The notes: a model not told the origin generated them from the letters alone. DNA of 58,592 nt, filler included, from Platydemus manokwari (GCA_037951405.1; 4 parts of 4 records of this genome joined end to end with filler, not necessarily neighbours in it); one strand, 5' to 3'; shown: positions 35,951-55,173, numbered from the whole stretch's first letter. Made by a program: numbers and translations.

Positions 35951-37935
35951 ATCAGTGATCTAGAATTCTGTTGTTACCTTCTTTAATTATGATTTCAAAT
36001 AAAGACGTCGACCATTACTACTCCTGAGATCCTAACTATGATGGTTTTTTAGAAATAAAATCAATAATGATTTCTTAGCAAAAGAAATGATCACATAAAA
36101 TAAATCAAATGAAAAAATTGTCTCTCAACAGAATAAATTTCTGAAAGCTCAAATTTGTCGTGTTTTAATAAAACTACAAAAGCTTTCCATTGAAATGCTA
36201 ACAATGATCGAATTAAAATGGTTAGAATTAGCTGTTCAAAATTGGAATTCTGGAATGAGATTTGACATTCTTGATGATAGGAAGACAAATTCATAAAATT
36301 TCGAATTTAGGAATTATCAAATCTTTATTTTTAAAAAAACTTCATCGTTGAAAACACAAATTTGATAATTCTTAAATGTTGTGACCAATTTTTCTAATAA
36401 AATCAAAAGAAAAAATGGAGGTAAAATTACTTTTACATCAAACATATTTAATTCAACATCATTTTCGATTTCAAAATTTTTAAGCTCGTCTAAAATAATT
36501 AACAATTTTTAATAACTAAAATTCAGTTCATTCTCAAAAGATTCATATTTGAATTAATTGGATGTAAATATGCGAAAACAGATTTCAAAACATTAAATTT
36601 ACTCTGACGAATCAAAATAGAAATTTCAAATTAAAAAGTGCCGCGCTAATATGTAAATAGGTTTTTGTCTTTATATTTGTTCCGAAATCATTGTCAATAT
36701 TAGAATATTTTCATTTAGTGATGCACTTCGGCATTATAATTCAATTATTCTAACAATTTCTTTTAATCTCTGATATGATTTTCAACATAAATGATAACCT
36801 TAACATTATTGATACGTTATTTGAAAGTAATTGTGAATTTTTGTTTCTTTTTCATTCATATTTTCGATTTTACTCAAAAATATTTATTCGATACCTAAAC
36901 ACACGACACACAAATACGAAACACAATTAAAAAATACTCACAAATTAATCATAGAGTATTAACAAGTTTTGCCTCTGTAATGTAAGTGTATCTGAGTTGT
37001 ATTTTGAACAATTTGTAATTAACTTTTCCATTGGATTATTCGCGCGTTTTAATAATCGAAAAATGCTTTATTTATGCTTACCGATTAGTAGCCCGTTGAA
37101 ATAAATGCTATTTTCCTTCTGATTGGTCCCAAGAGTGATTTAGTTTTATTATATATAACATTCTAAGAAAAGTACCTTTTAATTAAATTTTATGAAAGCT
37201 ACTAATATAGCTTGAAAAATATTTTACAATAGATCGATAATCGGTGTTATCTTTAAGTAAAATAAAATTTTTCGGCTTAAGTTAAAAAATGATTCTTTTC
37301 ACCTACTTCCCTAGTGATGAATTTTCGAGCACTATGTAATTTTTGTAACATAATTTTATATACAATTGCGATATTTGGTTTATTCGTATAATTCAGTTAA
37401 TATCTCTCTTTTAGGATGTCGAATTTAGTCTAAATTTCTTTTACATTGGGTGTTTTTCAAAATCTAGTTAAATACGTATTCTTTAAGAATTAATATTTGG
37501 TATCTAAGATATCAAAAAATTAAACATAGAATGATCAAAATTTATCATTTTTTCGCTGAACTAGATCGTCATTCAGACATAGCATCTTAGTACAAACTGA
37601 CGATCTCGTAGTAAATATTATTAAAAATATTAAAATGCGTTTTCCTTATCAGTAATATATATTGAACAATTTCAATGACTAACATGTTTATATTAAATAA
37701 AAACAAAAGATTTTAAACACGAATCGATTAGCAATAAATCGGCAAGTGGTTCTCTAATTAGATATATAGGTTATGAGAAACACAAAAAGATTAATACTCT
37801 TTCATTAAAGCACAATATGTTAGAATAATAAATTTTGCTTGTTGAATAAGTCTTCTGGAAAATTTCATCTCCAGATATATTATTCAATATAAAATGATTC
37901 ACAAAAGATAAAACACTCTTTTCGTTACAAATGAA

Positions 37936-37941
37936 TTTATT
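37936..37941 (-). terminator. Polyadenylation signal of the prohormone gene
   Basis: AATAAA about 50 nt after the TGA. Confidence 0.5.
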
Positions 37942-37989: not shown

Positions 37990-38428
37990 TCACAGATTCT
38001 CAAATCCACTTCCAAAAGTCATCGGATGGATGAGTCGCTTTTGAAGCAATCTTTTATAAATCTGGTATTCCGGAATTCGATAACCGGCGGAAAATCTCTG
38101 AAAATAGTTCGTTTTTTCATAAATATCATCTTATAAATTTTCCATTGCTTATTAGATATGTATTTGAAATTTAATAATATAATATAATATAATTTTTAGG
38201 AAAGGACTAAATAAAATATTTCCTATTTTGACTAAAATATAACGAGATGTGTATAATTCATTGTGATCATAATGACAATCATAATCACTTTAATTTTATA
38301 TAATTATAGAGGTTATAAGTAATAATATATGGTATTATTGATAAAAACTAATATTATACCTCTACACCTGCCCATACATCTGCCAAACATACCAAAGCTA
38401 TTAAAAGAACAGCAATTATGAGTTTCAT
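37990..38428 (-). CDS. Secreted peptide prohormone, planarin (SPP-6/7/8/9/17) family, 58 aa
   Basis: Exon 1 38428-38360 (MKLIIAVLLIALVCLADVWAGVE, donor GAG|gtataa); exon 2 38097-37990 (acceptor tattttcag|, RFSAGYRIPEYQIYKRLLQKRLIHPMTFGSGFENL*). Phase-0 join, hydrophobic signal peptide, two KR sites, C-terminal LIxPMTFGSGFxNL peptide, upstream TATA and downstream AATAAA. Confidence 0.9.
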
Positions 38429-38463
38429 TGTTGGAAATTATAAGTATGAATTATGTGGAGATA

Positions 38464-38469
38464 TTTATA
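38464..38469 (-). promoter_or_regulatory. TATA box of the prohormone gene
   Basis: GTATAAATA about 36-41 nt upstream of the ATG, which has A at -3 (acaATG). Confidence 0.6.
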
Positions 38470-41390
38470 CCGAATTTGTTTAATTTACTAATCGATCCAA
38501 CGACCTGCGGCTGAATTGGTTTAGTAATGGATTCATTAATGGGACCAACAGATATTTGATAATTTTCTAGGAGAAAATTAAAACCAATTTAAAGATGAAT
38601 AAAATTAGAAAAACACCACTGAAAATTAAGGAGAAATGAAAAACATGGAAAAGAGTTGACATATTCCGAAGAGGTATTCAATTTTTATCATTTATAATTA
38701 CTTTAACCGGCTTTGCAATTCAAAAAAATAATAATAAAATATAAAATAATATGATTATACGGAAATTTTCATATAAATATAAATATAAACATCAATAAGT
38801 AAACAATTTAGTAAACAGTTATGATAAACAAACCAATCTAATTACAATGTATTAATATAAGATTTATTTCCCCAATAATATTTTTCAAAATCGAAACACT
38901 TATTTGATTCCAATGATAAGCTCATCGAATTTCAAAATACAATGTTTTCACTAAATTTTACCAACACAAATAACTTACCCTAGGCAACCAATTATAATTT
39001 CAATATAATTTCATATTAGTATATCAACGTCAATTCATCTTCGTCTATCAATTTTCTTCAGATTCTTTGTACCAAAACTAGTTCGAATATTTTAGGCTTA
39101 TTAGTTATAAAAAGATAGAATTATTCCAATCGAATTAAAGCTCTTAAATAATATTGTCATTAATTTAAGATTTATTTTTGAATATGCCATTCCAATGAAT
39201 TAAAAATGTTTCTTTAATTAAATACAGTAAAACACAATCATAATATGATATACAACATTTAGTAGTAACTCTCCAGCACTGACCAGCCAAGACAACAAAT
39301 GTATAACAAAGATACTCGGTAACGTTGCAAAAGCGAATGAAAAGACTTCACATGAAGAAATCTCGAAACAAAATATCAGAAACATCAATCCCAAAAAATC
39401 AATTTAAAAGTCGATGTGAGGACTTGTGTCACTCCATCATGAAGACTGCTATGTTTATAAATCTAAATATATTATTTTACTACACAAAGTTTGGGGTTGA
39501 GTAAAATTCGACGTATATAGTCAAATCACAGAAAAACGAATTTTAAACAAAAAAGATCATAAAATCGACGAGAAAAAAGTCCGGAAAATTCAGTCAAGAG
39601 TCAGTTAATTTTATCTTTCATTTAATTTTTATGTTTTTAAGTTTCATATCTTAATTCAAGGATTTTAATCGATAACTTCCTGGTTTCCTATTTTTCATAG
39701 GAGTATGAGGGTGTTTGTTCCATTTTGTTTAAATGAGCCAATAAACGATGAAAATTCGAAAAGTAATCGTAAATTTCCAGATCCTTGATTTGTTGCAAAC
39801 AAGCTGTATCCCAATTTTTGCGTATACCATTTTCACTGGTTTATTTCTGGATTTTTAACACAATAATCTTTGTTTTCTTAATTAGTCCTTCGATTATCTT
39901 GAAACGGAGTAAGTCAAAAAAGTTAATAGAAAAAACTAAACTATGATGACACCATAGATTGAGTGATAACTAGTATTAAACGTTGCTTTATAGACAGTAA
40001 TCCGAGTTTTAAAATTCTGACTTATAAAATTTTTAAATAACTACTTATTATTTACACTCTAGTTGGTGGTACACCTATATAAATATTTTCTTTCATTACC
40101 ATTTCTGATTACTTGCAATCTTTATACTTAAGATTATTATGATATCGCACGGCTCTTATCCATTAACACTAAGTCCTACCAATGGGATTTTATTAGGTAA
40201 TTTATCAGTGCTCAATATCATTATATATACATACAACAACTCTTCAACCATACTTATATTAAACATTTGTGGTTATAATTATAAATTATATTCATGTTTA
40301 ATCATCACTTCAATTATAAAATAAACTTTCAGACGATAAATAAAGTACTAATCATTAATTGTTTCATTATATTAAATTTTAAAATAATCAGATATAATTA
40401 TGATTACCAAAAATATGATATTTTTTCATTTATATTTCAATTAATCTAATGAAATTTTCCGCTTAGTATAATTACGATAACAACTATCATTTAAAACAAA
40501 TGTTGTCACTAAAAGCTAACTCATTCGATCCAATTATAAATCTTTTTTTAATCAAAGGAAATTCTTTATTTATGTTAGAGAATGCATAAACAATCGGCTT
40601 AAAATATTATCTATGCTCAGCTGAATAATTTTTGCATGCATCATTTTCACAATGAAACCAATTATTTATTTCAATTAATTTCAAAAGATAAATAAGAAAT
40701 AGATTTATAAAATTGTAAATTTGCATGACAAAAATTTTCCAAATATATGTTTGATCAGAAAGCAAAAAATTCCTTTTGTATTTATTTAAAAAGATTACAT
40801 CGTTATCAAAGTCAAAGCATTTCTGGTTTGATGTTATAAAATAAAAATAATCCATTATCAAAATTAAATATTCATTTCAAAAACTTTCAGTGATTTTTTT
40901 GAAATTATTTTTTATTTGATGAAGAGAGTTTGATAAATTTTTTTGAAAAGTAGTTTTGCATGAAAAAGTTCAAGTTAAAAGTTTACAAAAAACAAAAAAT
41001 TATGAAATCAAAATTAAATAAGTACAAATTAATAAAGGCGTTTCCGTAAAATTATGGATAGTTAAAAGAATTTTATAATTGATTAAATGATTTGACTTTT
41101 TTAAAATAAATATTTAAATTCTCATAGATTAGTTTTAGGAACAATTTATTTTCATATTTCAACTTGCTACTTTTTAAAGTGCATAACAAACACCAATTGA
41201 TTTTAATAAACAAAAAAATAGTTTTACATTATATGAAGTCCACATCTAATGTATATTAATTTTTAAAACATTACAGACTTTCGAATAAAGTTACAAGATT
41301 TTTTTTTAAATTGAGACTTTTAAATCGATTTTTAAAAATCATTTGTTTGAATTCTAACAAAGCATTAATCTTTGATAATATAAATATAAG

Positions 41391-43223
41391 ATGACATCTC
41401 CAGCTATCGGTATTGATTTGGGAACAACCTTTTCCTGTGTCGGTGTATTTCAACACGGTAAAGTTGAAATTATCGGAAACGACCAAGGAAACAGAACTAC
41501 TCCATCATTCGTTGCTTTCAATGACAGTGAAAGACTCATTGGAGATGCTGCCAAGAATCAAGCTGCCATGAACCCAACTAATACTGTTTTCGATGCCAAA
41601 AGATTGATCGGAAGAAAATTCAACGATCCTTCATTGCAAAATGATTTAAAACATTTTTCATACAAGGTTATTGAAGAAGACACCCGACCAAAAATTCAAG
41701 TTGAATTCAAAGGTGAAAACAAAACCTTCTCACCAGAAGAAATTTCTTCCATGATTCTTTTGAAAATGAAAGAAACAGCAGAAGCTTATCTTGGAGTACA
41801 AGTTAGTGATGCCGTCATCACTGTTCCAGCATATTTCAATGATAGTCAGCGTCAAGCAACTAAAGATGCTGGTGCCATCGCTGGTCTCAATGTTTTGAGA
41901 ATTATCAACGAACCAACTGCAGCTGCCATTGCTTATGGACTTGATAAGAATGAAAAGAAAGTTAAAAACATTTTAATTTTCGATCTTGGAGGAGGAACTT
42001 TCGATGTTTCTATCCTTGCAATTGAAAACGGTATTTTCGAAGTCAAATCAACTGCTGGTGATACCCATTTGGGTGGTGAAGACTTTGATAACCGCATGGT
42101 TGATCATTTTATCCAAGAATTCAAGAGAAAGCACAAGAAGGACATGAGTCAAAACAAGAAATCACTTAGAAGACTAAGAACAATGTGTGAACGTGCCAAG
42201 AGAACTTTGTCATCAAGTGCTACTGCCAACATTGAAGTTGATTCATTATTTGAAGGTATTGATTTCTACACTTCAATTACAAGAGCTAGATTCGAAGAAC
42301 TCTGTGCTGATCTTTTCAAATCAACTCTTGATCCAGTTGAAAAGGCTTTGAAAGATGCAAAGATGGATAAGAAATCTATCAGTGAAATCGTTCTTGTTGG
42401 TGGTTCCACAAGAATTCCAAAGGTGCAAAAATTGCTCCAAGATTATTTCAATGGAAAGGAGTTGAACAAATCAATTAATCCAGATGAAGCTGTTGCCTAT
42501 GGTGCTGCTGTCCAAGCTGCCATCTTGTCTGGAGATACCAGTGATATTGTCCAAGATATGCTTTTGTTAGATATCACTCCTTTGAGCTTGGGTATTGAAT
42601 CCATTGGTGGAGTCATGTCAACCGTTGTTAAGAGAAACTCTACAATCCCAACTAAACAATTCGAAACATTTACAACAACCGAAGACAACCAAACCAGCTT
42701 GTTGGTCAGAATTTTCGAAGGTGAAAGAGCCATGACTAAAGATAACAACTTTTTGGGTGAATTTAATTTGAATGGAATTGCCCCAGCACCAAGAAACGTT
42801 CCTCAAATTGAGGTCACTTTTGACATTGATGCTAACGGTATCCTTAATGTCTCTGCTGTTGACAAGGGTACTGGAAGCAGAAACAAAATTACCATCAGTA
42901 ACGATAAAGGTCGCTTGTCAAAGGATGATATCGAAAGAATGGTAGCTGAAGCTGAGAAATTCAAAAAAGAGGATGATGATCAAAAGGAGAGAATAAGTTC
43001 CAAGAACGCTTTGGAAACATACGCTTACCAAGTCATGTCCACTGTCGAAGATCAACAATTCAAAGATAAGTTCACCTCATTTGACAAGATTATCGTATCA
43101 GACAAATGTGAAGAAGTCATCACCTGGTTAGAAAACAACCAATCGGCTTCTAAAGAAGAATTTGATTCAAAAAAGAAAGAATTAGAAAAGGTCTGTCGAT
43201 CATACATGAGCAAATTGTATTAA
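41391..43223 (+). CDS. hsp70: Intronless cytosolic-type HSP70, 610 aa, lacking the C-terminal GGMP/EEVD tail
   Basis: All three HSP70 signatures ([37 protein letters not shown]), plus [15 protein letters not shown] and linker DMLLLD. Ends CRSYMSKLY*, with AATAAA right at the stop. Confidence 0.97.
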
Positions 43224-43585: not shown

Positions 43586-46500
43586 TCAAATGCCTTCGGG
43601 CTTTTTCATCTTGGAATTATATTTGCGTATTAGTTGTGATTGACTGACAACTCCGTGTTCTTCTTGAGAGAAAGCATATCCGCCTAGAATATTATGTAAG
43701 ATAAAATGATCACAATCCCCTCATACAACCGAAGGATTAATTTACGAAAAGTAATTATGTAACTTAATCCAAGATTCATTTGTATTAATAACTATTTATT
43801 GGATAACCATTGGATTTTTGATAACTATGACCAAAACTTGACACATAGATTGCCAATGTTTATATAAGAGATAATAATAGTTTATCAATTATTTTCATAG
43901 TTATTATTAAAATAAAGTATTTATTAATTTATTATCAAAATCCTTACGATTGATATCCTTCACCAGTTTGTCATCGCGTGAGCGAAATGAATTCAAAAAT
44001 TTAAATGACACTCGACTAAAAAATTATTATATATAATATATAAAAAATATCCTTTATGCCTCTTAATTTTTTCCATGACTGGAGGAATAATTTTACCCGG
44101 ATCTTGATCCTTCTGTTCCATTTGCATGACCCTTTCTCTGAGAGATTCGAATAATGTCGTTTTAATCCTTTAATATGAATAAAATTGCCAGATGAATTGA
44201 AATTTATTGAAAAATATATATTACGCTTTCCATGCAATATCGCGAGTAAGTGCCACACATGGAATAATAATAAATCCAAACCAAAACGAAGCACTACTGA
44301 ATACGGATTGATACTGGGATAAAAGTATGAACATAAAACCAATATTTATAAAAGCAATATTCGACAACCATTAGAGACATATCGACAGATGTGCCAAACA
44401 TTTGGAAGAAATGGGAATAGATTATGAAACATACAAACCACGTTACAATACTACCCCATATACCGATGTGGGACAGTCCTGTCCATGTAATATGTTCCAA
44501 TCCAGCTTTCATTGACACAGTAACAATAACAGACTATTTATACATGTTAATACAAAATAAACATTATAACAATATTTACAGTGTAAATAAAATTCCCAAG
44601 AAACCATAAGCCACCAGTTTGGCCATTTTTGAATGGAATATCTATCAATGAATGGAATAATTATTTTATGGTAATAATAAATAATTGTGATAAAAATAAA
44701 TTTGTTATCAATTTTCCGGGTTTCTTTCCGATAGAAATAACAACCAATTTAACATGAATCTGGTAGAGAGTTCAGAACATTATTTATTTATTCATGTTGA
44801 TAATAAATAATTTATTAATAATCATCAAAATAATAAGAAAACGATTTTCTTTAATATAAGAGATTCGTGAATGAAATATTTATATTATTATTATTCCACT
44901 TCATCTCCATGGAAATATCCAAATAATAGAAATAACAGAACCATATTTGATGATCAAAAGAAGCGTTTTATCGACACTTTTCAAATTAATCGAGGGAAAT
45001 CCTTCAAAACAGTGATGTTGGTTTAAAATTTCAACCTCCCAATGGATCAATATACAAATGAATTATATTATTTATCATGAATTTTAATTAACTTTTAATA
45101 TCGATGTGATTTTTCTAAACAATACAGCATTGTAATAACGGTCCCCATTAAATATCAAGTCAGTGAAAATAATAAATGTCTTCATGGTAAATAGAAACAG
45201 ATGAAAATCATACCGTGATTATTACTTAAAATAGTAAGCCAGAATATGATGAATGAATGATATAATGCATTCAACATCCATTGGATAAATACCTATGAGG
45301 AGAAATGAATTAATATATCGGTAAAAACAATTTTAAACTTTGTAATCAAAATGAGAGCTGTGTTGGATATCACGATATAGTTGAGGATATTTGATAGTAT
45401 TTTTAGAGCTACAACTGCGATCAAATAATCCGAGAGCTAAAGGTGGAAGAGAACTGAAGAACTAAATAACAATGAGCGACCATCCAATATATCGATCGGT
45501 ACAACTTACCACATTGTAAAAACTGATCGTCCAACGTTCAAAAATGATTTGACCAGAAAAACCACTTATAAAGCCAAACCAAAATTGAATGATAAAAAAA
45601 CAACAATTTTTATAAAAGAAATAAAGAATTAATTTTCGGATTCGTTCGAGATTCCAAGCACCATGAACAAGTAACAAGCGATTCAAAAATCGGAATTGTG
45701 CAATCGAATAATCGGCATTGGAAGCCGCTTGTTTGCCTTCCAATCCGTTGATTCCGACACCAACATGAGCTGCCTATTAATATTGTTTCTAGTTGTAATA
45801 TATAAACAAAGATATGAATTAACTTGTATCATAGCAACATCATTAGCTCCATCACCAATTGCAAGAGTTATGGTATCATTAATACTTTGTTTCACTAAAG
45901 TGACAACCTCAGCTTTTTGTGAGGGACTTACTCTAAAATTATTGTTAGAGTAATGAATGAATAATAAAAATGCATATTTTTATTCACATAATATTCAATA
46001 ACTTGATCATGAAATCATAGCATTTTTATACAATTTTTCTGCACAAATAATTTCTCAAAAAATGCCAAGCAAATCGAATCGTAAAACAGTTCATTTTGGT
46101 CGGATAAATTCCCAATAGATATTATTATGATTCCTAAACTTTTCAGAATAAATATTACTTAGTGCCCCCAAACTAATCTACACAATTTTTTTCAACTTTT
46201 AGTAGCAATTTATAAAAAAATCTTAATGTTATTATTTTTTGTTACTTAATTTTAACTTCTCGTAATATCACAACAAACTAACCTTTCTTTTAGTTTTATT
46301 TCAGCTAATCATTACGGGGAATCCCAGAAATACCACCGCTCTACTACCAGACTTCAGCGTTGCAAGCAGCATTGAGTCCGCGATTACACATACTTCAATA
46401 ACAATTAGTGAGAACGTACAGTGCGTTGTTTAAAGACAAATTAAGCGTTTTGGGCAAACAAGATACATCAAAATTTTTAATAATCATTTTCTTACATTAT

Positions 46501-49500
46501 TATAGTTTTATCGTCCCCAAATGAGCTTGTATTCACCACTGACCCTCTGGATCTTTGCAGCGCTCACTTTGGGAATCACTGCTCTAATATATCATATATC
46601 ACTAATTAAGATTATTACTGTATTATATTATTATTAATATTTATTTTTTCTAAAATCAATTAATTCTTTCTCAGTTTTCAATATGAAACCTTGAGAATTA
46701 TGAAACTTGTACCGATATAATAAGAACTCTAGCAAGTCTATTAAAAGCGTAAATGTTGACATATAATGGAACTATTCTATTTCAATAACATAATGCAGCT
46801 GAATAACTTATTCATAACTCTTTATCAATAAATGCAAACCAAATATATAAATACATACTAATTGAATGGAAAATCGAACTTACCTGCAACAAATCACGGA
46901 CTTACAAGAGAGAGCAAGTTGCAGAAAATTAGTTCGACATTGAAAGTCCAAAGCATATTTGAGAGTCTACAGAACGAAAATCATTAATTGATCAGTAGAA
47001 ACAAAGGATGATGTTTTTTTCTTATGGATTATTTGACATTTATAAATGGATGCTGACTCACTTCACCACTGATAATCAATCCAATATCGTTTTCTTTGCC
47101 AAGATTATCACCAAGTAATTGCATAATCATATATATTTGAGCTCGAGTAGTATCAAGTGTATTCGAATCAAGAATACACAAACTCATTGACTGATTCAAT
47201 AGTTGACAAGAATATCCTATTCATAGAGATAATAATAATATATTGGTCTTTCTTTTCAGTTGCATACCAATATTTATTGCAGTTTCTTGTTTATCACCAG
47301 TAAGAACCCATATTTTTATTCCAGCTTTGGTCAAATTTGATATTGTTTCAGGAACTTGTTCTTGTAATTTATCCTCAATAGCCGATGCTCCAATCAATAT
47401 CAAATCCTACACACATCACAATTCAATAATAAACAGTTTATTCAAATTCAGAGATAGACTTTTTCAATCATTTCTGCAACTTCGGCAAGCTTTTCTTCTC
47501 GCTTTTCAATGGCAACATTGGCTTGATGAAACAAACTATTCCATTTCTCATATTCAACACAATCAATTTCCGTATAAGCCATACATAAAGTTCTCAAACC
47601 TTATATCAGTGATAGCAAAACAACAATTGATTATATGAAGAATTAATAAAAATAAATACCGAGTCTAGCAAATTTTTCTAAATGTTCCAAGGTTACTTGA
47701 CTGTTTTGAGATTGGTCAGAGAGTCGCTCGTAAATGACATTATCCTATCAAAAGTAAAGATTCACATAATGTTAGAAATATATATCAAAATTGGTAAAGG
47801 GATTTGCAAAACTAGATCTTATTACAAATTATATTTCTGTGATAATAATAATCTAATTACATTAAGTTTAAATTTGCTATATCACAGCCAAATTCATTTA
47901 CCAAACTTATTAATATCCGACTTCAACGAATATGAATATAGAAAAATACTAGTTGCTGGAATCATGTTATTATGTTATTTACAAAACAGACCACTTTCAA
48001 TTTACCATAAATAACGATATATTGACCGTTCTGGCTTGACTGATGACATAAAACTACCATTATTTAAGATTTCTTATTGGTTTCATGAAGTTTTTAACCA
48101 ATTTTCTTAGATTTTTAATATATTTTTTCTGCAAACTAGTTTAACATCGACAGTTTCCCTTGTTAGAAAATCGCCTTATTAAAGAAGTTTCATGATAAAA
48201 TAAATAGAATCATTATATATACAAACAACTCTTTTAATTATCTGAAGCTTCCTTACTAGTGGATAAATGTTATTAAAATTGAAACTTGGATAAAAAACCA
48301 ATAAATATGGTGTGTACATAGTAAGGAATAATTAAAATATTAAAAATAATTTAATATTCATAACTATAAATGTTATTATTATTTATTAATTTACTGCTAG
48401 AATAAATATAACTCGCAATTTGATCGTAAATATTATATAAAAAATTAAAACATAGATTGTTATTCTTACAGCTCCTTTACAAAAGAGAATGATTTTGGAT
48501 TCTGGTGTTCTGACAATAACCGACATACGTTTACGGAGACTGGTGAATTCAATAACATTGAGTACGTCGTATTCATAATTTTTATTGTTCTATTGAAAAT
48601 GTAAATAACCTCTTATTAAATGATACTAATAATCCTTACAACTAATATGTTAACACTATCTGGTGTTCGAGTGTGAAATATATATCCCATTTCCTTAGCG
48701 GCTTTTACCAAAGCAGCTTCATCTAAAATGATTAAGTTCCGTTGATCATTCATCAACATCAATAATATTAACAGCACCTGGACTAGATGCTTGATAAATG
48801 ATATCATCACTTTCATCTTTTTCCGGTATAACCGTGTGACAAATACTTAAAGCCTTGAAGAACAAATCAACACTAGGATCACCGATATGAATCTTCTTCA
48901 ATAAATCTCTATCGTGTTGAATCAATTCATAATCGTTGTCATCGTCCCTGGATATCATTAACAAATAGAAAATGAGGATAAACAGATAAACATAAAAAGT
49001 ATTAAGTAAAAGACTAAAGATTTTTGTCTCGACCCAGGTTTAACAAACTTGATAGTCTTATCTCAAAATACCAATACTTTAAAAATCTTTAGTCTTTCAT
49101 TGAATATGCTTATGATATGGTATTATGAATAAAATTCTGACAACATTTGAGCATTATTGCAAACATTAACGTTAATAACAAGAATTATTAAGAGAAAAAT
49201 AATTAGTCCAAAGTTTTCGAGATCCAATTTTTCCTGGCTATTTTGATGAAAAATTGTATCATAATGAATATGAAAAAAGTACAAAACCCTTTACTAAGTC
49301 ATTGATGTGTATAAAAATACCTCAGAATAATGTTAACAATAGTTATATGCACTTAGGCAAGTTCAACTATATTTGGTAGAAGCTTAGCCTATATTATTAT
49401 TCTTATTTCTTGTATGATATTCTTATTGAAACCATATTGAGTTATCATAATTAACTGATTTTGTAGAAAAAAACAGGGATACATTAACGGATAATTATAT

Positions 49501-52500
49501 ATCGTAATAAGCACTTTCGATTTATTTTTAAAATATAATTTAAAAAGAAAATACAAAAAACAAGAAATCGAAAAGTGAAATGAGAATATTGCAATCGAAA
49601 CGAGTATAATACGATTGGAGATAAAAAAAATAAATATAGATAATAATTCTACAACATAAAAATACCCATATATCACTCCATCAATCGAACATTGCCTGAA
49701 TTCCATAATATTCCTTGTTAATGTTCCAGTTTTATCAGAGAATATGTATTTTATCTACGATAACAAATCATTAAATATACATTATCGATATAATTAATTT
49801 TATTTCTATTTATAATGAAAAATAATTATCACGTATAAATATATGATAATAAATATGATTCGTAGGATATTATTCGATATGTAACAAAAAAATTGAATTT
49901 CAAATTGATATTGTTGAAGAAAACTGATCAACAAAGACTAAATGAGATCAAAAAAACTTTTCAAACGTTAATTCGTTTTCAGTAAATTAATTTCCACTTT
50001 ATTATGAACAACATCATTATCTGGAAAATTTCGTTTTCAAAACCAATTTATCCATGCGATGAAAAGTGATTTGTAAATAAATTCTCTGCTCCAATGATTT
50101 TTGTTTAATTCGATAAGAGGCAAACGTTTATATTTTTTGACGAGAATAATTTTCGAGCAATATTTTTTCATCAATTTGAAACAGGAAAATTGAAATTTGC
50201 ATTAGATTTGTAAATTAATCAAATTTAATGAAAATATTTCGAATAAATCTCATATATATAAATATAAATTAGAATCAACTAAAGATCCTATATTTTATGT
50301 TTAAGACAAAGCACATTTCAACGATTAATTATTCATTTAATTGTCTTCAGCAACCATTTATTCTACAGATAAAAATATATCATAAAAATATTTTAAAATT
50401 AACGATCATAAATAATATTGCGTATTCAAAGAGAATTTCCAAGCTAATAATTGAAAAATAAGCGTTATTTTTTATATTTATTAATAGATATCTCCTTATT
50501 ATACATCGGATTTCATTGTCTATGTGTTTTATGTGGGAATTTTACAAATATATTACATTATTTTTACAAATACATTCCGATTTTCAAATTAGTATTCCCT
50601 ATATAAAACAATAAAATAAATTATAAGGGGTCATCACTTGTTTTGGTCAATGTTTATACATAGACAGTGTCAACACCTTAAAACATATAATCATAATTTT
50701 AGACATGAAAACTCATTATATTGAAATCGTACTTCGGGGCGCTAGTAATTATATTTAGCTTTGCAAGGAAATCGTTCAAAATACCTTTCTAAAGTACATT
50801 TTAAATACAGATAAATTTATTGATAAAGGCAAATGAAAATATCGGTTTGATCACGAATAAAATTCACATGTATGTTTTATAATATTTTACATTAGATGAA
50901 TCTTGAAAATATTGATAAAATCGGAATAAAATGCTATTTTGAAATAATCAAAGGAACACATTAAAAATCGTGTATAAATAGTAAAGCCATTTTTACAAAC
51001 ATCTTTACAGAACTGCATTTATTTCAATTGATATCAAGTGCCACAATTAATAATAAATATTATCTATTAACAAAAAGCACATTATTTCGATAACATTTGG
51101 TGTGCACTGAACCAATTAAAATAATTATCAAAAAATTTTCCAAAAACATCGAAATTCTATTCAAATCACATTAATGCTTGTAACCGGAAGAAGCCTATTA
51201 ATCAATATTTGCAAAAATATTGAAATATCAAATTTCAACTTAAACCATTGTTATTGTTTGTTACGTCACTCGCTCCTTTGCTTATTCTTTAATTACTTAT
51301 ACTTGAAAATATTTCAAATTTGCTTCTGTTGGGAACAAATAATATTTTATTAATCATATGACTAATTGATTCAAGACACCTTACAATAAGCACATTATTT
51401 TGAGATTATAATTTGTCGTTTTACATAATATATTATCTGCATAAAATTAAAATAAACAAAAAATATTTTATCTAATAAGATTTGATTAAAAAAATTAAAT
51501 TATTATGCAATTCCTAAGATCAAATAGATAATAAAAATTGTTATAAACATTGTATTGAGGATAAATCCGAAACAAAATAACACTTCATTAAAAATTTTGA
51601 TCGATTTTAAAAATGAAATCTTCTTTATATGCTGAATAAAGTCTATTCTCATTTTAATGAGCTAAATGAACAAAAATGCCGGTGTGCATAAAAATTGAGA
51701 TATATTATTAGCAAATAAACCAACCAATTAAAATTGTTTGTTAAAAAACACATTTAAAATGCTTACCTGGCCTAATTCTTCATTGAGATTTGATGTTCGA
51801 GCATTGGCAGGTGTATTTGTGATTGGATCATACATTTCAATGTCCTAAATATATAACGATATTAAAATCATATTCGCTTAAAGTAGAATCCATTGCAAGG
51901 CGTCGCAGAGAATAAAAGCGATATAAATGAATAGACGAGAATGCATAAAACATCACCGAGATCTTACCACATTAATAAAATGAGCTTGTGTGAAACGGAC
52001 CAATTCCATAGTAACTTGCATACTTATGGGGATAATAGAATGAAACATAATAAAAGCTGTTAGGAGCATCAGACCGAAATTGTTTGCTGGTAATTCTACA
52101 GTAAATATCAATGAAAATGTCTACACGTTTTGCAATTGACTGGGATTCTATATTTTCTTTTTAGATCTCGAGCAAAGTGAAAAGAGATTGGAGTAAGAAA
52201 AAATTTTCGTTAAATATATAATTAATTAAACCAAATTCTACAAATTCCTCATTATATCATAGAAAAAATCAAAGAGAAAATCATCGATAATAAAAATTTA
52301 TAAAAAGAAATATGAAAAAAAAACTCACTATCATAAGCAAGATACCAAGCACTGGCTTCATTACTGTTTTCCCAAACAACACCAGCAATAGCCGTTGCAA
52401 GGGTTAAAAGTAAAATCATGATACCCAGGCCCAAAATCTGAAAATAAATAATAATATTAATCTCTGAAAGTTTCGATTATTTTGTTTACGTATTTATTAG

Positions 52501-55173
52501 TTTTTTGATCAAGAGATGATCGTTTGAGTGGTGGTGTGGTACTGTTGAGCATAATTTTCGTTTCATGACCAGTATATACAACAACCCCTATAAATAATAT
52601 GAATAACATATGGATTGTATTGATAGATCGATGAGAAATATACCAAATAGCCATTTCGTATTTTTCAAAATCGCTCCACGCAAAAGCAATTGATCACTAT
52701 TAAGAGAATATGTCCTAGGAAAATCATGAGATTCATTACAACACCAATAATGATCAATGAGAATATGATTCCCAATCATTACCCTTTTTCACCAAGTGAT
52801 AAATTTCCATAAAATTCATAAAGATGTCGACTTGGTGGTTCACAAACAATCTGGCCTTTCAATTTTTCGAGATCAGCAATCGTCAATATGTTGCTGGTAC
52901 ATGATAATCCCTGAGTTTTAGAAATATTAATGCATTTCTTTTCATAAAAAATCAATTAATAAATATTTTTAATAAATATCATTTTTACAAATTTCACTGT
53001 TATTATGATAAACCTTAGATGTCAGCATATTTTTGTTCATAATATCATATTAGGCCAATGAAAAATTTAGTCTTTTGCTTAATGCTTTTAACATAAAAAT
53101 ACAGTTGATGTCAAATCATTAAAGCGACGATTTTAAATCAATAAGTACGGCTGATATGTGAATGGCTCGTGAAAATCTTGAAATTTATGATAAATAATTA
53201 CAAAATTATAATGGATACGAAATATAATTTTTATCTGCATGATAATCATTATATATTTGGAAAAAATATGGTTTCTAATTACATCTTTTATATAAAGATG
53301 ATAGGTTAATTATAAGAATAGAAAACAAAATGGTTTTGTTTCAAATAATCGATCGTCAGCTAAAACAATACGCCCACGCACGGTTGAAATTTTCATTTCA
53401 ACAAATACATTGATAAAATAATGTCTATTAAACCTATTGTAGTACAAAATTAACCCTTTACAAACGCCTAATTCCTCGAGGAACCTCACGAGACTCATCT
53501 TATTCTTAAAATTACATGTGAATAATATTTTGAAAAATATTGAACAAGTAACAACGGATATCAACGCGGAAAGAACTCCTGCAAAACTCGCCATGATGAT
53601 GCATATAATGAGCGATATTTGATAAATAACATTAATGATAATGCCCTTCCTAACAATGGTTTCATGATCATTTTATATGGATTTCAGACAAGAAATCGAA
53701 AATGATTTTTGTGAAAGAAAAGCGTAAAAGATGCTACCATGCAGAAAAAACTGTTGAAAATGCGATTCATATTGGTTCCTATGTCTAACTGGACAAGAAT
53801 GGAATACAAGTGGCTCGTTTAGTCCCTCGATTGCGAAGGATCTTGTTTAGAAATCACTCGATTAATTATTTTAAAAAGAACCTAGCATTGATTAATTGAT
53901 CAAATTATCAATCCGACTCATCATTGCTGGTTATATTTTCGAAATTTTCCAATTGGATATCAAAAATCCGGATAATCGAGATTATAAGAACATAAAAAAA
54001 GTTAAATTTTTCGAACAGATTTTAATGCAAATTTCGAGTATTAAGTATTTTAATAGAATAATTATTTCCATAAATCGAAAAAATGTCATCTACTTGTCGC
54101 ATTTTTAAATTTGTTTCTCCATCGAGATTTGATGTCTCGATGTAACTCATACCGTGCGGTTCACTCGATGAAATGAGTAACATATCGGCCGGTATGCTTT
54201 GATCTCTTAACAATTTTACATAGTCACCAACTTCAAGATCTTTCCAGCAAATTTCAATCCATTCGTGATTTCTCAATACTAAAAATAATCCATAAACCAT
54301 CAATATTGACGTTTTCCATGAAAATCAATGATGCATGAAAATCGTTCCGCATGAATAAACAGACGGTAAAAATGATCAATTAATGAAAAATCATGAAAAT
54401 GAAGAAACAAAAATCCATTTTAAACATTATTAAATAATGTGAAATTGAATTTTTATGGGTGATCGATTACAAAAATCTTACTAAGAATTTTGCTATTGTT
54501 TGTCGAATCGTCTGCTTTGTGTCGTTTCTGGAAATAAGAATGTGGTGAATTCTGTGAAAAATCATGACAATGAATACTCACATAATCTTCAACTATTTCC
54601 TTTATGGCTGATATTGTAAAAATAATAAATAATGGAACAGCTGTTGTAAAGCGTCCTGTTGGAGAAACTCTTGGAAATTGCTTAATGACATCGATTTATT
54701 AATGATTAAAGAGTCCAATTGCTAGTATATTTTTAAAATATATTTTCTTAAATAATCTTTCAAATTCGATCTTTAAATTATAAAATATAATTCATAAAAT
54801 TAAATTAAGATACTTAGAAAAAAAACTTTCCTTAATTACCAATTTATTTACTATTGATATCATTTAGAAAATGAAAATTTGCATATTTTTTATAAAAAAT
54901 AAAAATTTTATTGAATTGACTCACTTGCAAAATTGCAATAAATAAGAATAAAACATTTGAATATTTTCTAAATTGTTCAAATAAAAATTTTGGAACAAAC
55001 GTCAAAATACTGTATTTGGCCATGCTAGAAAACATTTCAATTGAGAAATTGTAACAATTTTAATGAAACCTGATTTTATTTGTAGAAAAACTTTCTATTT
55101 GGCCATTATTTAATCTCACAAAACGTTGTGCGGGTGATGTTTCGCTCGAATCTTCAACATTATTGAGAATCAT
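43586..55173 (-). CDS. atp8a: P4-ATPase phospholipid flippase, ATP8A subfamily (about 25 exons)
   Basis: Exons encode [29 protein letters not shown]|[61 protein letters not shown] (DKTGT 49722-49736), [57 protein letters not shown] and a C-terminal GYAFSQEE (GYAFS 43667-43681). The start at 55173 is provisional because a 3' splice site lies just upstream. Confidence 0.95.
46160..46581. mobile_element. hAT/Charlie-like MITE in atp8a intron
   Basis: Right end CACTTTGGGAATCACTG (46565-46581) is identical to 56481-56497 and is followed by CTCTAATA (Charlie-like target). Degenerate left end TAGTGCCCCCAAACT at ~46160. Confidence 0.55.
53450..53850 (+). mobile_element. Possible pogo/Tigger transposase N-terminal relic in atp8a intron
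   Basis: Broken frames [26 protein letters not shown] and a W-L motif resemble CENP-B-type HTH domains. Confidence 0.3.

What the first reader, a model, noticed from the sequence alone, without database searches (positions are those of the whole stretch)
37990..38470. Hidden two-exon neuropeptide prohormone gene: a variant planarin with an LIHPMTFGSGFENL peptide
Seen: this gene is absent from the ORF track, but a phase-0 GT-AG intron (38359-38098) joins two short exons into MKLIIAVLLIALVCLADVWA-GVERFSAGYRIPEYQIY-KR-LLQ-KR-LIHPMTFGSGFENL*, flanked by a TATA box and a polyA signal. Known (from memory): planarian SPP-6/7/8/9/17 'planarin' precursors have this layout, a Y-ending first peptide, KR-x3-KR, then LIDP(M/L)TFG(S/Y)GF(A/S)NL, non-amidated. 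Inference: the products would be (GVER)FSAGYRIPEYQIY and LIHPMTFGSGFENL. The usual Asp3 is His and an acidic residue appears in FENL, moving the negative charge from the N- to the C-terminal end. That could mark an undescribed paralog with different receptor selectivity. I know of no established receptor for this family.
Basis: partly seen in the sequence, partly recalled or inferred. Interest (0 to 1): 0.85.

Follow-up and report, generated by a model that had tools for sequence, protein, structure and literature searches.

The report
Unannotated SPP-9-like planarin neuropeptide gene
This is a small, intact, two-exon gene for a secreted neuropeptide precursor of the flatworm "Planarin" family, closest to Schmidtea SPP-9; it matches no published member, but it is an ordinary addition to a known family and its expression could not be tested here.

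Summary
A TATAAA lies 36 nt upstream of the ATG and an AATAAA 49 nt after the stop.

The Planarin family (SPP-6, -7, -8, -9, -17) is real (Collins 2010, PMC2953531), and mass spectrometry detected its peptides.

- Exon 2 searched against 1.84 billion proteins gave one hit, Schmidtea mediterranea SPP-9 (E 3.1e-5, 19/27 identical).
- Exon 1 aligns separately with the SPP-9 signal peptide (12/23), in the same order.
- None of the five published precursors is identical to this one.
- His3 and Glu12 of the C-terminal peptide fall outside the published range (Asp; Ser/Ala).
- A DNA run confirms both codons.

Also unusual: the first dibasic site is E-R rather than K-R, and the spacer is LLQ rather than x-x-E.

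No RNA run was found, so splicing and expression are untested. The species is hidden. I cannot tell a spp-9 ortholog in another planarian (my favoured reading) from a sixth paralog. Altered receptor selectivity is speculation.

Verdict: a real gene and a new member of a known kind, of modest interest.

The parts
38464..38469 (-). TATAAA box, 36 nt upstream of the ATG
   Evidence: Sequence and motif scan. This is only a consensus match; the transcription start was not mapped.
38360..38428 (-). Exon 1 coding part: 23 codons, MKLIIAVLLIALVCLADVWAGVE (signal peptide plus a short pro-region)
   Evidence: Translation. It aligns to SPP-9 residues 1-23 with 12/23 identical and 18/23 similar (tblastn E 1.7e-5). 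The h-region is 14 residues with mean Kyte-Doolittle hydropathy 3.49. Sites fitting the -3/-1 rule follow residues 14, 16 and 20.
38098..38359 (-). Intron: 262 nt, GTATAA...TTTTCAG, phase 0, 18% GC
   Evidence: Ten in-frame GT..AG combinations exist. Only this donor keeps all of exon 1 colinear with SPP-9. There is no RNA evidence.
37990..38097 (-). Exon 2 coding part: 35 codons plus TGA, RFSAGYRIPEYQIY-KR-LLQ-KR-LIHPMTFGSGFENL*
   Evidence: Translation. The only hit among 1.84e9 representatives is Smed SPP-9, E 3.1e-5. BLASTP gives 19/27 identical.
38056..38094 (-). Predicted first peptide core FSAGYRIPEYQIY. It shares PEYxxY with the mass-spectrometry-detected SPP-9 peptide SLPYNPEYELY.
   Evidence: The N-terminal boundary is uncertain because the upstream site is E-R, not K-R.
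38035..38055 (-). KR-LLQ-KR processing spacer
   Evidence: Published members have KR-MLE-KR or KR-FVE-KR.
37993..38034 (-). Predicted C-terminal peptide LIHPMTFGSGFENL: 14 aa, no Gly amidation donor, monoisotopic mass 1561.76 Da. His codon is at 38028-38026 and Glu codon at 38001-37999.
   Evidence: It is 12/14 identical to the SPP-7/8 peptide, 11/14 to SPP-6 and SPP-9, and 9/14 to SPP-17.
37936..37941 (-). AATAAA polyadenylation-signal match, 49 nt after the stop
   Evidence: This is only a consensus match.
38394..38394 (-). Single difference between the window and DNA run X1 (A>C on the + strand). It changes codon 12 from TTG to TGG, Leu12Trp in the signal peptide.
   Evidence: table 3; codon position worked out.

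Best explanation
A compact gene of about 0.5 kb, two exons on the minus strand, encodes a 58-residue preprohormone of the planarian Planarin family, SPP-9 subtype. Inferred mechanism, by analogy with the peptides detected by mass spectrometry from SPP-6/7/8/9: (1) the signal peptide is removed on entry into the secretory pathway; (2) a prohormone convertase cuts at the two KR sites; (3) a carboxypeptidase trims the basic residues; (4) this releases the non-amidated C-terminal peptide LIHPMTFGSGFENL, a spacer tripeptide LLQ, and an N-terminal peptide ending ...FSAGYRIPEYQIY. The upstream site is E-R, with no basic residue at P4, P6 or P8. The N-terminal product is therefore more likely to be the longer GVERFSAGYRIPEYQIY, or LADVWAGVERFSAGYRIPEYQIY if the signal peptide is cut after Cys14 as annotated for SPP-9. 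What is shown: the sequence, the exon structure, and homology of both exons to SPP-9. What is inferred: transcription, splicing, processing and secretion. I think it most likely that this is the spp-9-type planarin of a planarian other than S. mediterranea, rather than a sixth S. mediterranea paralog.
For:
- The family, its five precursor sequences and its detected peptides are in Collins 2010 and Ong 2016.
- Exon 2 gave one hit in 1.84e9 proteins, Smed SPP-9 (UniRef E3CTK1 / DAA33915.1), E 3.1e-5.
- The two exons match SPP-9 independently and in order: tblastn E 1.6e-11 and 1.7e-5 against background of 0.014 or worse.
- The stop falls directly after ...NL, as in SPP-9 and SPP-17.
- Start codon, GT-AG splice sites and reading frame are intact. 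Exon GC is 0.38-0.40 against 0.18 in the intron.
- The N-terminus is signal-peptide-like.
- TATAAA and AATAAA sit at sensible distances.
- DNA run X1 confirms the exon 2 letters.
- For 'another species': only one public run holds this DNA and none is RNA, whereas S. mediterranea has been sequenced many times (from my own knowledge). The neighbouring HSP70 has no hit above 81%.
Against: - There is no transcript evidence. The one run found is DNA.
- Several positions conserved in the published members are changed together: first KR to ER, spacer Glu to Gln, Asp3 to His, Ser/Ala12 to Glu. That pattern would also fit relaxed constraint.
- The only difference from run X1 in about 3 kb is nonsynonymous (Leu12Trp).
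- Neither predicted peptide appears in the S. mediterranea peptide tables. This is uninformative if the species differs.
- The protein is absent from the 5.8e9-cluster protein collection.
- The ortholog-versus-paralog call rests on indirect cues only.
Confidence: 0.78

Rival explanations
1. It is a sixth, previously uncatalogued Planarin paralog within S. mediterranea or a very close relative. It would have arisen by duplication of an spp-9-like gene, and its C-terminal peptide would have diverged (His3, Glu12) toward a different receptor preference.
For: It is not identical to any of the five published precursors. The family is known to have expanded by recent duplication (Fig. S3 legend). 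The protein is a mosaic: signal peptide and first peptide are closest to SPP-9, while the C-terminal peptide is closest to SPP-7/8 at 12/14. About 55% identity to SPP-9 lies within the spread among known paralogs.
Against: Only one public run holds the DNA and none is RNA, which is odd for a heavily sequenced model species. Neither peptide was reported in two S. mediterranea peptidomic studies. No other planarin gene lies within the 24-kb piece, unlike the adjacent spp-6/spp-7 pair. Receptor selectivity is untested, and I found no receptor reported for the family.
Confidence: 0.15
2. It is a decaying or silent duplicate: a planarin gene copy that still has an open frame but is no longer expressed or correctly processed.
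For: The first dibasic site is lost (E-R). The otherwise invariant Asp3 and the spacer Glu are replaced. The only variant against run X1 is nonsynonymous. There is no RNA evidence.
Against: The ATG, both splice sites, the frame, both KR sites flanking the spacer, the stop position, TATAAA and AATAAA are all intact. Twelve of 14 C-terminal peptide residues are retained. The exon/intron GC contrast is preserved. No frameshift or premature stop is present.
Confidence: 0.06
3. It is a chance resemblance in AT-rich non-coding DNA.
For: The elements are short. TATA-like and AATAAA-like strings are common in DNA with 26% GC (one search lists several).
Against: There are two independent, colinear matches to SPP-9 (E 1.6e-11 and 1.7e-5) joined in frame by GT..AG. 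The reverse search of 236 billion residues returns only SPP-9.
Confidence: 0.01

Closest known systems
Smed-SPP-9 (secreted peptide prohormone-9, S. mediterranea; UniRef E3CTK1, GenBank DAA33915.1 / BK007026)
   Same: Size is 57 versus 58 aa. The signal peptide core LI(V/L)ALVCLA(N/D)V..GV(Q/E) is shared. The first peptide has PEYxxY and ends in Y. Both have KR-x3-KR. The C-terminal 14-mer is 11/14 identical and ends the protein directly in ...NL without a trailing basic residue.
   Different: Overall identity is about 55%. The first cleavage site is E-R here, not K-R. The first peptide is two residues longer (FSAGYRIPEYQIY versus SLPYNPEYELY). The spacer is LLQ, not FVE. The C-terminal peptide has His3, Met5 and Glu12 instead of Asp3, Leu5 and Ser12. 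The Cys-Cys pair in the pro-region is replaced by Trp-Ala.
Smed-SPP-7 / SPP-8 (Planarins)
   Same: They have the closest C-terminal peptide: LIDPMTFGSGFANL versus LIHPMTFGSGFENL, 12/14. The KR-x3-KR layout is the same.
   Different: Their first peptide is of the xGFGFNRNxxxY type, unrelated to FSAGYRIPEYQIY. They carry a trailing K or R after NL. Their signal peptides differ.
Smed-SPP-6 and SPP-17 (Planarins)
   Same: They belong to the same family, with C-terminal peptides 11/14 and 9/14 identical.
   Different: SPP-17 has a long, unrelated first peptide and a KK site. SPP-6 has Tyr9.
Pedal peptide / orcokinin-type neuropeptides (recalled from memory, not tested)
   Same: They are non-amidated peptides of about 13-15 residues, with an Asp near position 3 and a G-S-G-F / G-F-G-F-N-like motif. 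The resemblance extends to both planarin peptides (GFGFN in SPP-6/7/8; xIDxxxFGSGFxN).
   Different: I ran no sequence search or alignment to test this. Collins 2010 lists separate pedal-peptide genes (ppp-1, ppp-2) and treats Planarins as their own family (file 5). Treat it as a lead only.

Membership tests
Planarin prohormone family (SPP-6/7/8/9/17, Collins 2010) | Significant sequence similarity to a named member across the precursor. The family was defined by paralogy and alignment. | tested here: met
   SPP-9 is the only hit in 1.84e9 proteins, E 3.1e-5. Both exons match in order, tblastn E 1.6e-11 and 1.7e-5.
Planarin prohormone family | Small secreted precursor (57-64 aa) with an N-terminal signal peptide | tested here: met
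   23 + 35 = 58 codons. The h-region is 14 aa with mean hydropathy 3.49, and -3/-1 sites are present. SignalP itself is not available here.
Planarin prohormone family | C-terminal, non-amidated 14-mer of the [LI]IDP[ML]T[FY]GxGF[SA]NL type at the very end of the precursor, preceded by a dibasic site | tested here: met
   KR-LIHPMTFGSGFENL-stop. It matches at 12 of 14 positions, with no Gly before the stop. See the next row for the two departures.
Planarin prohormone family | Asp at position 3 and Ser/Ala at position 12 of the C-terminal peptide. These are invariant or restricted in the five published members. They are a conserved trait, not a stated criterion of the family. | tested here: not met
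   The window has His3 and Glu12. Both codons are confirmed in DNA run X1.
Planarin prohormone family | KR-x3-KR spacer between the two peptides (present in SPP-6/7/8/9, absent in SPP-17) | tested here: met
   KR-LLQ-KR. Published spacers are MLE or FVE, so the terminal Glu is replaced by Gln here.
Planarin prohormone family | Dibasic (KR) site between the pro-region and the first peptide | tested here: not met
   The sequence reads GVE-R-FSAG: a single Arg with no basic residue at P4, P6 or P8. All five published members have KR there.
Planarin prohormone family | Transcribed and processed: expression in cells between the ventral nerve cords, around the pharynx and in the cephalic ganglia, with peptides detected by mass spectrometry | not testable with these tools
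   No RNA run holds the locus. The peptide strings are absent from the papers and supplements searched.
Planarin prohormone family | Host is a planarian (Tricladida) | tested here: inconclusive
   The organism name is coded. GC content of 24-30%, the SPP-9 match, and flatworm HSP70s among the best named hits are consistent with a planarian but do not identify the species.

The most novel reading that the evidence does not exclude
The gene is an expressed, previously uncatalogued Planarin. Its mature peptide has swapped the family-invariant Asp3 for His and gained Glu12, and has thereby acquired a receptor preference distinct from the LIDP-type planarins. If planarins are derived pedal-peptide/orcokinin-type peptides (a resemblance I recall but did not test), the change hits the residue most conserved across that wider family. 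That would give a natural ligand pair for deorphanising the planarin receptor.
Probability: 0.12. Interest if true: 0.5.

Novelty: new member of a known kind. Interest (0 to 1): 0.3.

Why it matters
Short, spliced neuropeptide genes are routinely missed by ORF finders and gene callers. This one is absent from a 5.8-billion-cluster protein collection. It adds a divergent member to a planarian-specific peptide family whose function and receptor, as far as I could find, are unknown. A natural Asp3-to-His / Glu12 variant could serve as a structure-activity probe once a receptor is found. Otherwise it is a routine annotation gain.

Tried and rejected
- **Extended query.** I lengthened the same reference in frame to 46 aa (window:37993-38130:-, which adds 11 intron-derived residues). 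No candidate was found.
- **SPP-9 as query.** It returned only itself, so SPP-6/7/8/17 could not be obtained as stored proteins. I compared them only as the short peptides printed in the paper's supplement.
- **Exact look-ups.** Look-ups of the window's HSP70 and of SPP-9 in public assemblies found nothing on record. Species, synteny and the spp-9 intron position therefore could not be checked.
- **Closest HSP70.** It traces to a Logan transcript contig (SRR33002330) of unknown species at 81% identity, which does not help.
- **Metagenome scan.** A scan with an SPP-9/exon 2 alignment found no relatives.
- **Pfam.** No family matched either exon or SPP-9.
- **Rfam.** Nothing was found in the piece.
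- **Paper searches.** Searches for the peptide strings, for planarin receptors, for later planarian neuropeptide catalogues and for an orcokinin link found nothing relevant.
- **Possible relic exon, rejected.** A + strand 'LIDPTTCG' at 38488-38511 has tblastn E 4.5 and no DNA inverted repeat with exon 2, so I rejected it as a relic of a head-to-head planarin exon.
- **Second planarin gene, rejected.** None is present in the piece.
- **Joined product left out.** The only use of junction-spanning residues was a local mass calculation for two candidate N-terminal peptides.

Full report
**What is there.** Read on the minus strand, the region holds these features:
- An ATG at 38428 opens 23 codons, MKLIIAVLLIALVCLADVWAGVE.
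- A GTATAA donor follows at 38359.
- After 262 nt, an acceptor ...CTATTTTCAG ends at 38098.
- The frame then continues in phase 0 for 35 codons, RFSAGYRIPEYQIYKRLLQKRLIHPMTFGSGFENL, to TGA at 37992-37990.
- TATAAA lies at 38469-38464, 36 nt before the ATG. The only AATAAA nearby is at 37941-37936, 49 nt after the stop.
- Exon GC is 0.38 and 0.40, against 0.18 for the intron and about 0.25 for the flanks.
- Without splicing, the frame stops one codon after exon 1.
- Neither exon appears in the mechanical ORF list at 25 aa or more.

**Is it more than chance?** Yes.
- Exon 2 was scored by phmmer against 1.84 billion representative proteins and gave exactly one hit at E of 0.001 or better: a 57-aa protein, E 3.1e-5.
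- That protein is Schmidtea mediterranea secreted peptide prohormone-9 (UniRef E3CTK1, DAA33915.1).
- BLASTP gives 19/27 identities for exon 2. Exon 1, tested independently, gives 12/23 identities and 18/23 positives against SPP-9 residues 1-23.
- In the reverse direction, tblastn of SPP-9 against the 24-kb piece puts exon 2 (E 1.6e-11) and exon 1 (E 1.7e-5) on top, on the same strand and in order. Noise starts at E 0.014.

**The splice model.** Ten in-frame GT..AG combinations are possible. Only donor 38359 with acceptor 38098 keeps the whole stretch that is colinear with SPP-9 (VCLADVWAGVE against VCLANVCCGVQ). Every alternative leaves exon 2 and its peptides unchanged.

**The family.** Collins et al. 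2010 (PMC2953531) named SPP-6, -7, -8, -9 and -17 the Planarins. They are a paralogous, expanded family expressed in cells between the ventral nerve cords, around the pharynx and in distinct brain cells. Both peptides of SPP-6/7/8/9, and the C-terminal peptide of SPP-17, were detected by mass spectrometry and again by Ong et al. 2016 (PMC4825013). The precursor sequences are in the 2010 supplement. None is identical to the window's product.

**How this member compares with the published five.**

| Published C-terminal peptide | Identity to LIHPMTFGSGFENL |
|---|---|
| SPP-7/8, LIDPMTFGSGFANL | 12/14 |
| SPP-6 | 11/14 |
| SPP-9 | 11/14 |
| SPP-17 | 9/14 |

- The signal peptide and the first peptide (PEYxxY) are of the SPP-9 type.
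- Position 3 is Asp in all five published members and His here.
- Position 12 is Ser or Ala in all five and Glu here. Net charge is essentially unchanged.
The site before the first peptide is E-R, not K-R, with no basic residue at P4, P6 or P8. The spacer is LLQ rather than MLE or FVE.
SPP-17 differs.

**Are the variant codons real?** The only public run holding this DNA (X1) gives a 2960-bp unspliced contig covering 37379-40337, with one difference from the window. It is therefore DNA. It agrees with CAT (His, 38028-38026) and GAG (Glu, 38001-37999). The single difference, 38394 A>C on the + strand, changes codon 12 from TTG to TGG (Leu12Trp in the signal peptide). X1 may come from the same sample as the assembly, so this is weak independent support.

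**What could not be shown.**
- Expression and splicing are untested.
- The protein collection holds no identical or near-identical protein.
- Exact look-ups of the neighbouring HSP70 and of SPP-9 in public assemblies returned nothing. Species, synteny and the spp-9 intron position are therefore unknown.

**Which species, and is it an ortholog or a paralog?** The organism name is coded. Four indirect cues bear on it:
- Only one run holds the locus, although S. mediterranea has been sequenced many times (my own knowledge).
- The adjacent HSP70 has no hit above 81%.
- Identity to SPP-9 is about 55%.
- Neither peptide appears in the two S. mediterranea peptide tables.

Together these make me favour the spp-9-type planarin of another planarian species (about 0.6). 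A sixth S. mediterranea paralog is less likely (about 0.15), and a silent, decaying copy least likely (about 0.06). The intact ATG, splice sites, KR sites, stop position and promoter/polyA matches argue against decay. The cluster of changes at conserved positions keeps that option alive.

**Mechanism (inferred by analogy).**
1. The signal peptide is removed. Candidate sites follow residues 14, 16 or 20. SPP-9 is annotated as cut after Cys14, with LANVCCGVQ seen at low confidence.
2. A convertase cleaves at the two KR sites, and a carboxypeptidase trims the basic residues.
3. Products: LIHPMTFGSGFENL (1561.76 Da), LLQ, and an N-terminal peptide ending in ...PEYQIY whose N-terminus depends on whether the lone Arg is cut. 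The three candidate masses are 1605.78, 2047.02 and 2702.35 Da.
4. No Gly precedes the stop, so the C-terminal peptide is not amidated, like the published planarins.

I found no reported receptor or phenotype for the family. 'Different receptor selectivity' remains a hypothesis.

**Context (in passing).** The gene lies head-to-head with an intronless 610-aa HSP70 ORF about 2.9 kb away. That HSP70 lacks an EEVD tail, and the piece has no perfect heat-shock element. A multi-exon P4-ATPase lies on the minus strand at about 45.4-54.3 kb. No second planarin gene is in the piece.

**Verdict.** This is a real, well-formed planarin-family gene that automatic annotation would miss. It is a new member of a known kind. 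The His3/Glu12 variant is genuine at the DNA level, but its significance is untested. Interest is modest.

Noticed in passing
window 41391-43223 (+): Intronless 610-aa HSP70 ORF (Pfam HSP70, E 2.5e-251). It ends ...SKLY, without the usual cytosolic EEVD tail. Best database identity is only 81% (a Logan transcript) and 78% to Dugesia japonica HSP70-2. No perfect heat-shock element (GAAnnTTCnnGAA) occurs anywhere in the piece. It lies head-to-head with the planarin gene, about 2.9 kb away.
   Followed up: partly
window about 45462-54303 (-): Multi-exon phospholipid-translocating P4-ATPase (flippase). The exon ORF at 54022-54303 hits E1-E2_ATPase, and the one at 45462-45743 hits PhoLip_ATPase_C (E 3.5e-34). 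The gene probably extends beyond these exons; I did not model it.
   Followed up: partly
window 38394: DNA run X1 reads C where the window has A on the + strand. This makes Leu12Trp in the predicted signal peptide. It is the only difference in a 2960-bp contig.
   Followed up: partly
window 37304-37437 and 39314-39447: Two short stretches flanking the gene have very high k-mer depth in run X1 (about 48,000 and about 1,080, against about 13 elsewhere). They are fragments of dispersed high-copy repeats and were not classified.
   Followed up: no
window 38488-38511 (+): The opposite strand of the promoter region reads LIDPTTCG, reminiscent of the planarin LIDPxTFG motif and of the head-to-head spp-6/spp-7 arrangement. 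However, tblastn gives E 4.5 and there is no DNA-level inverted repeat with exon 2. I judge it to be chance.
   Followed up: yes
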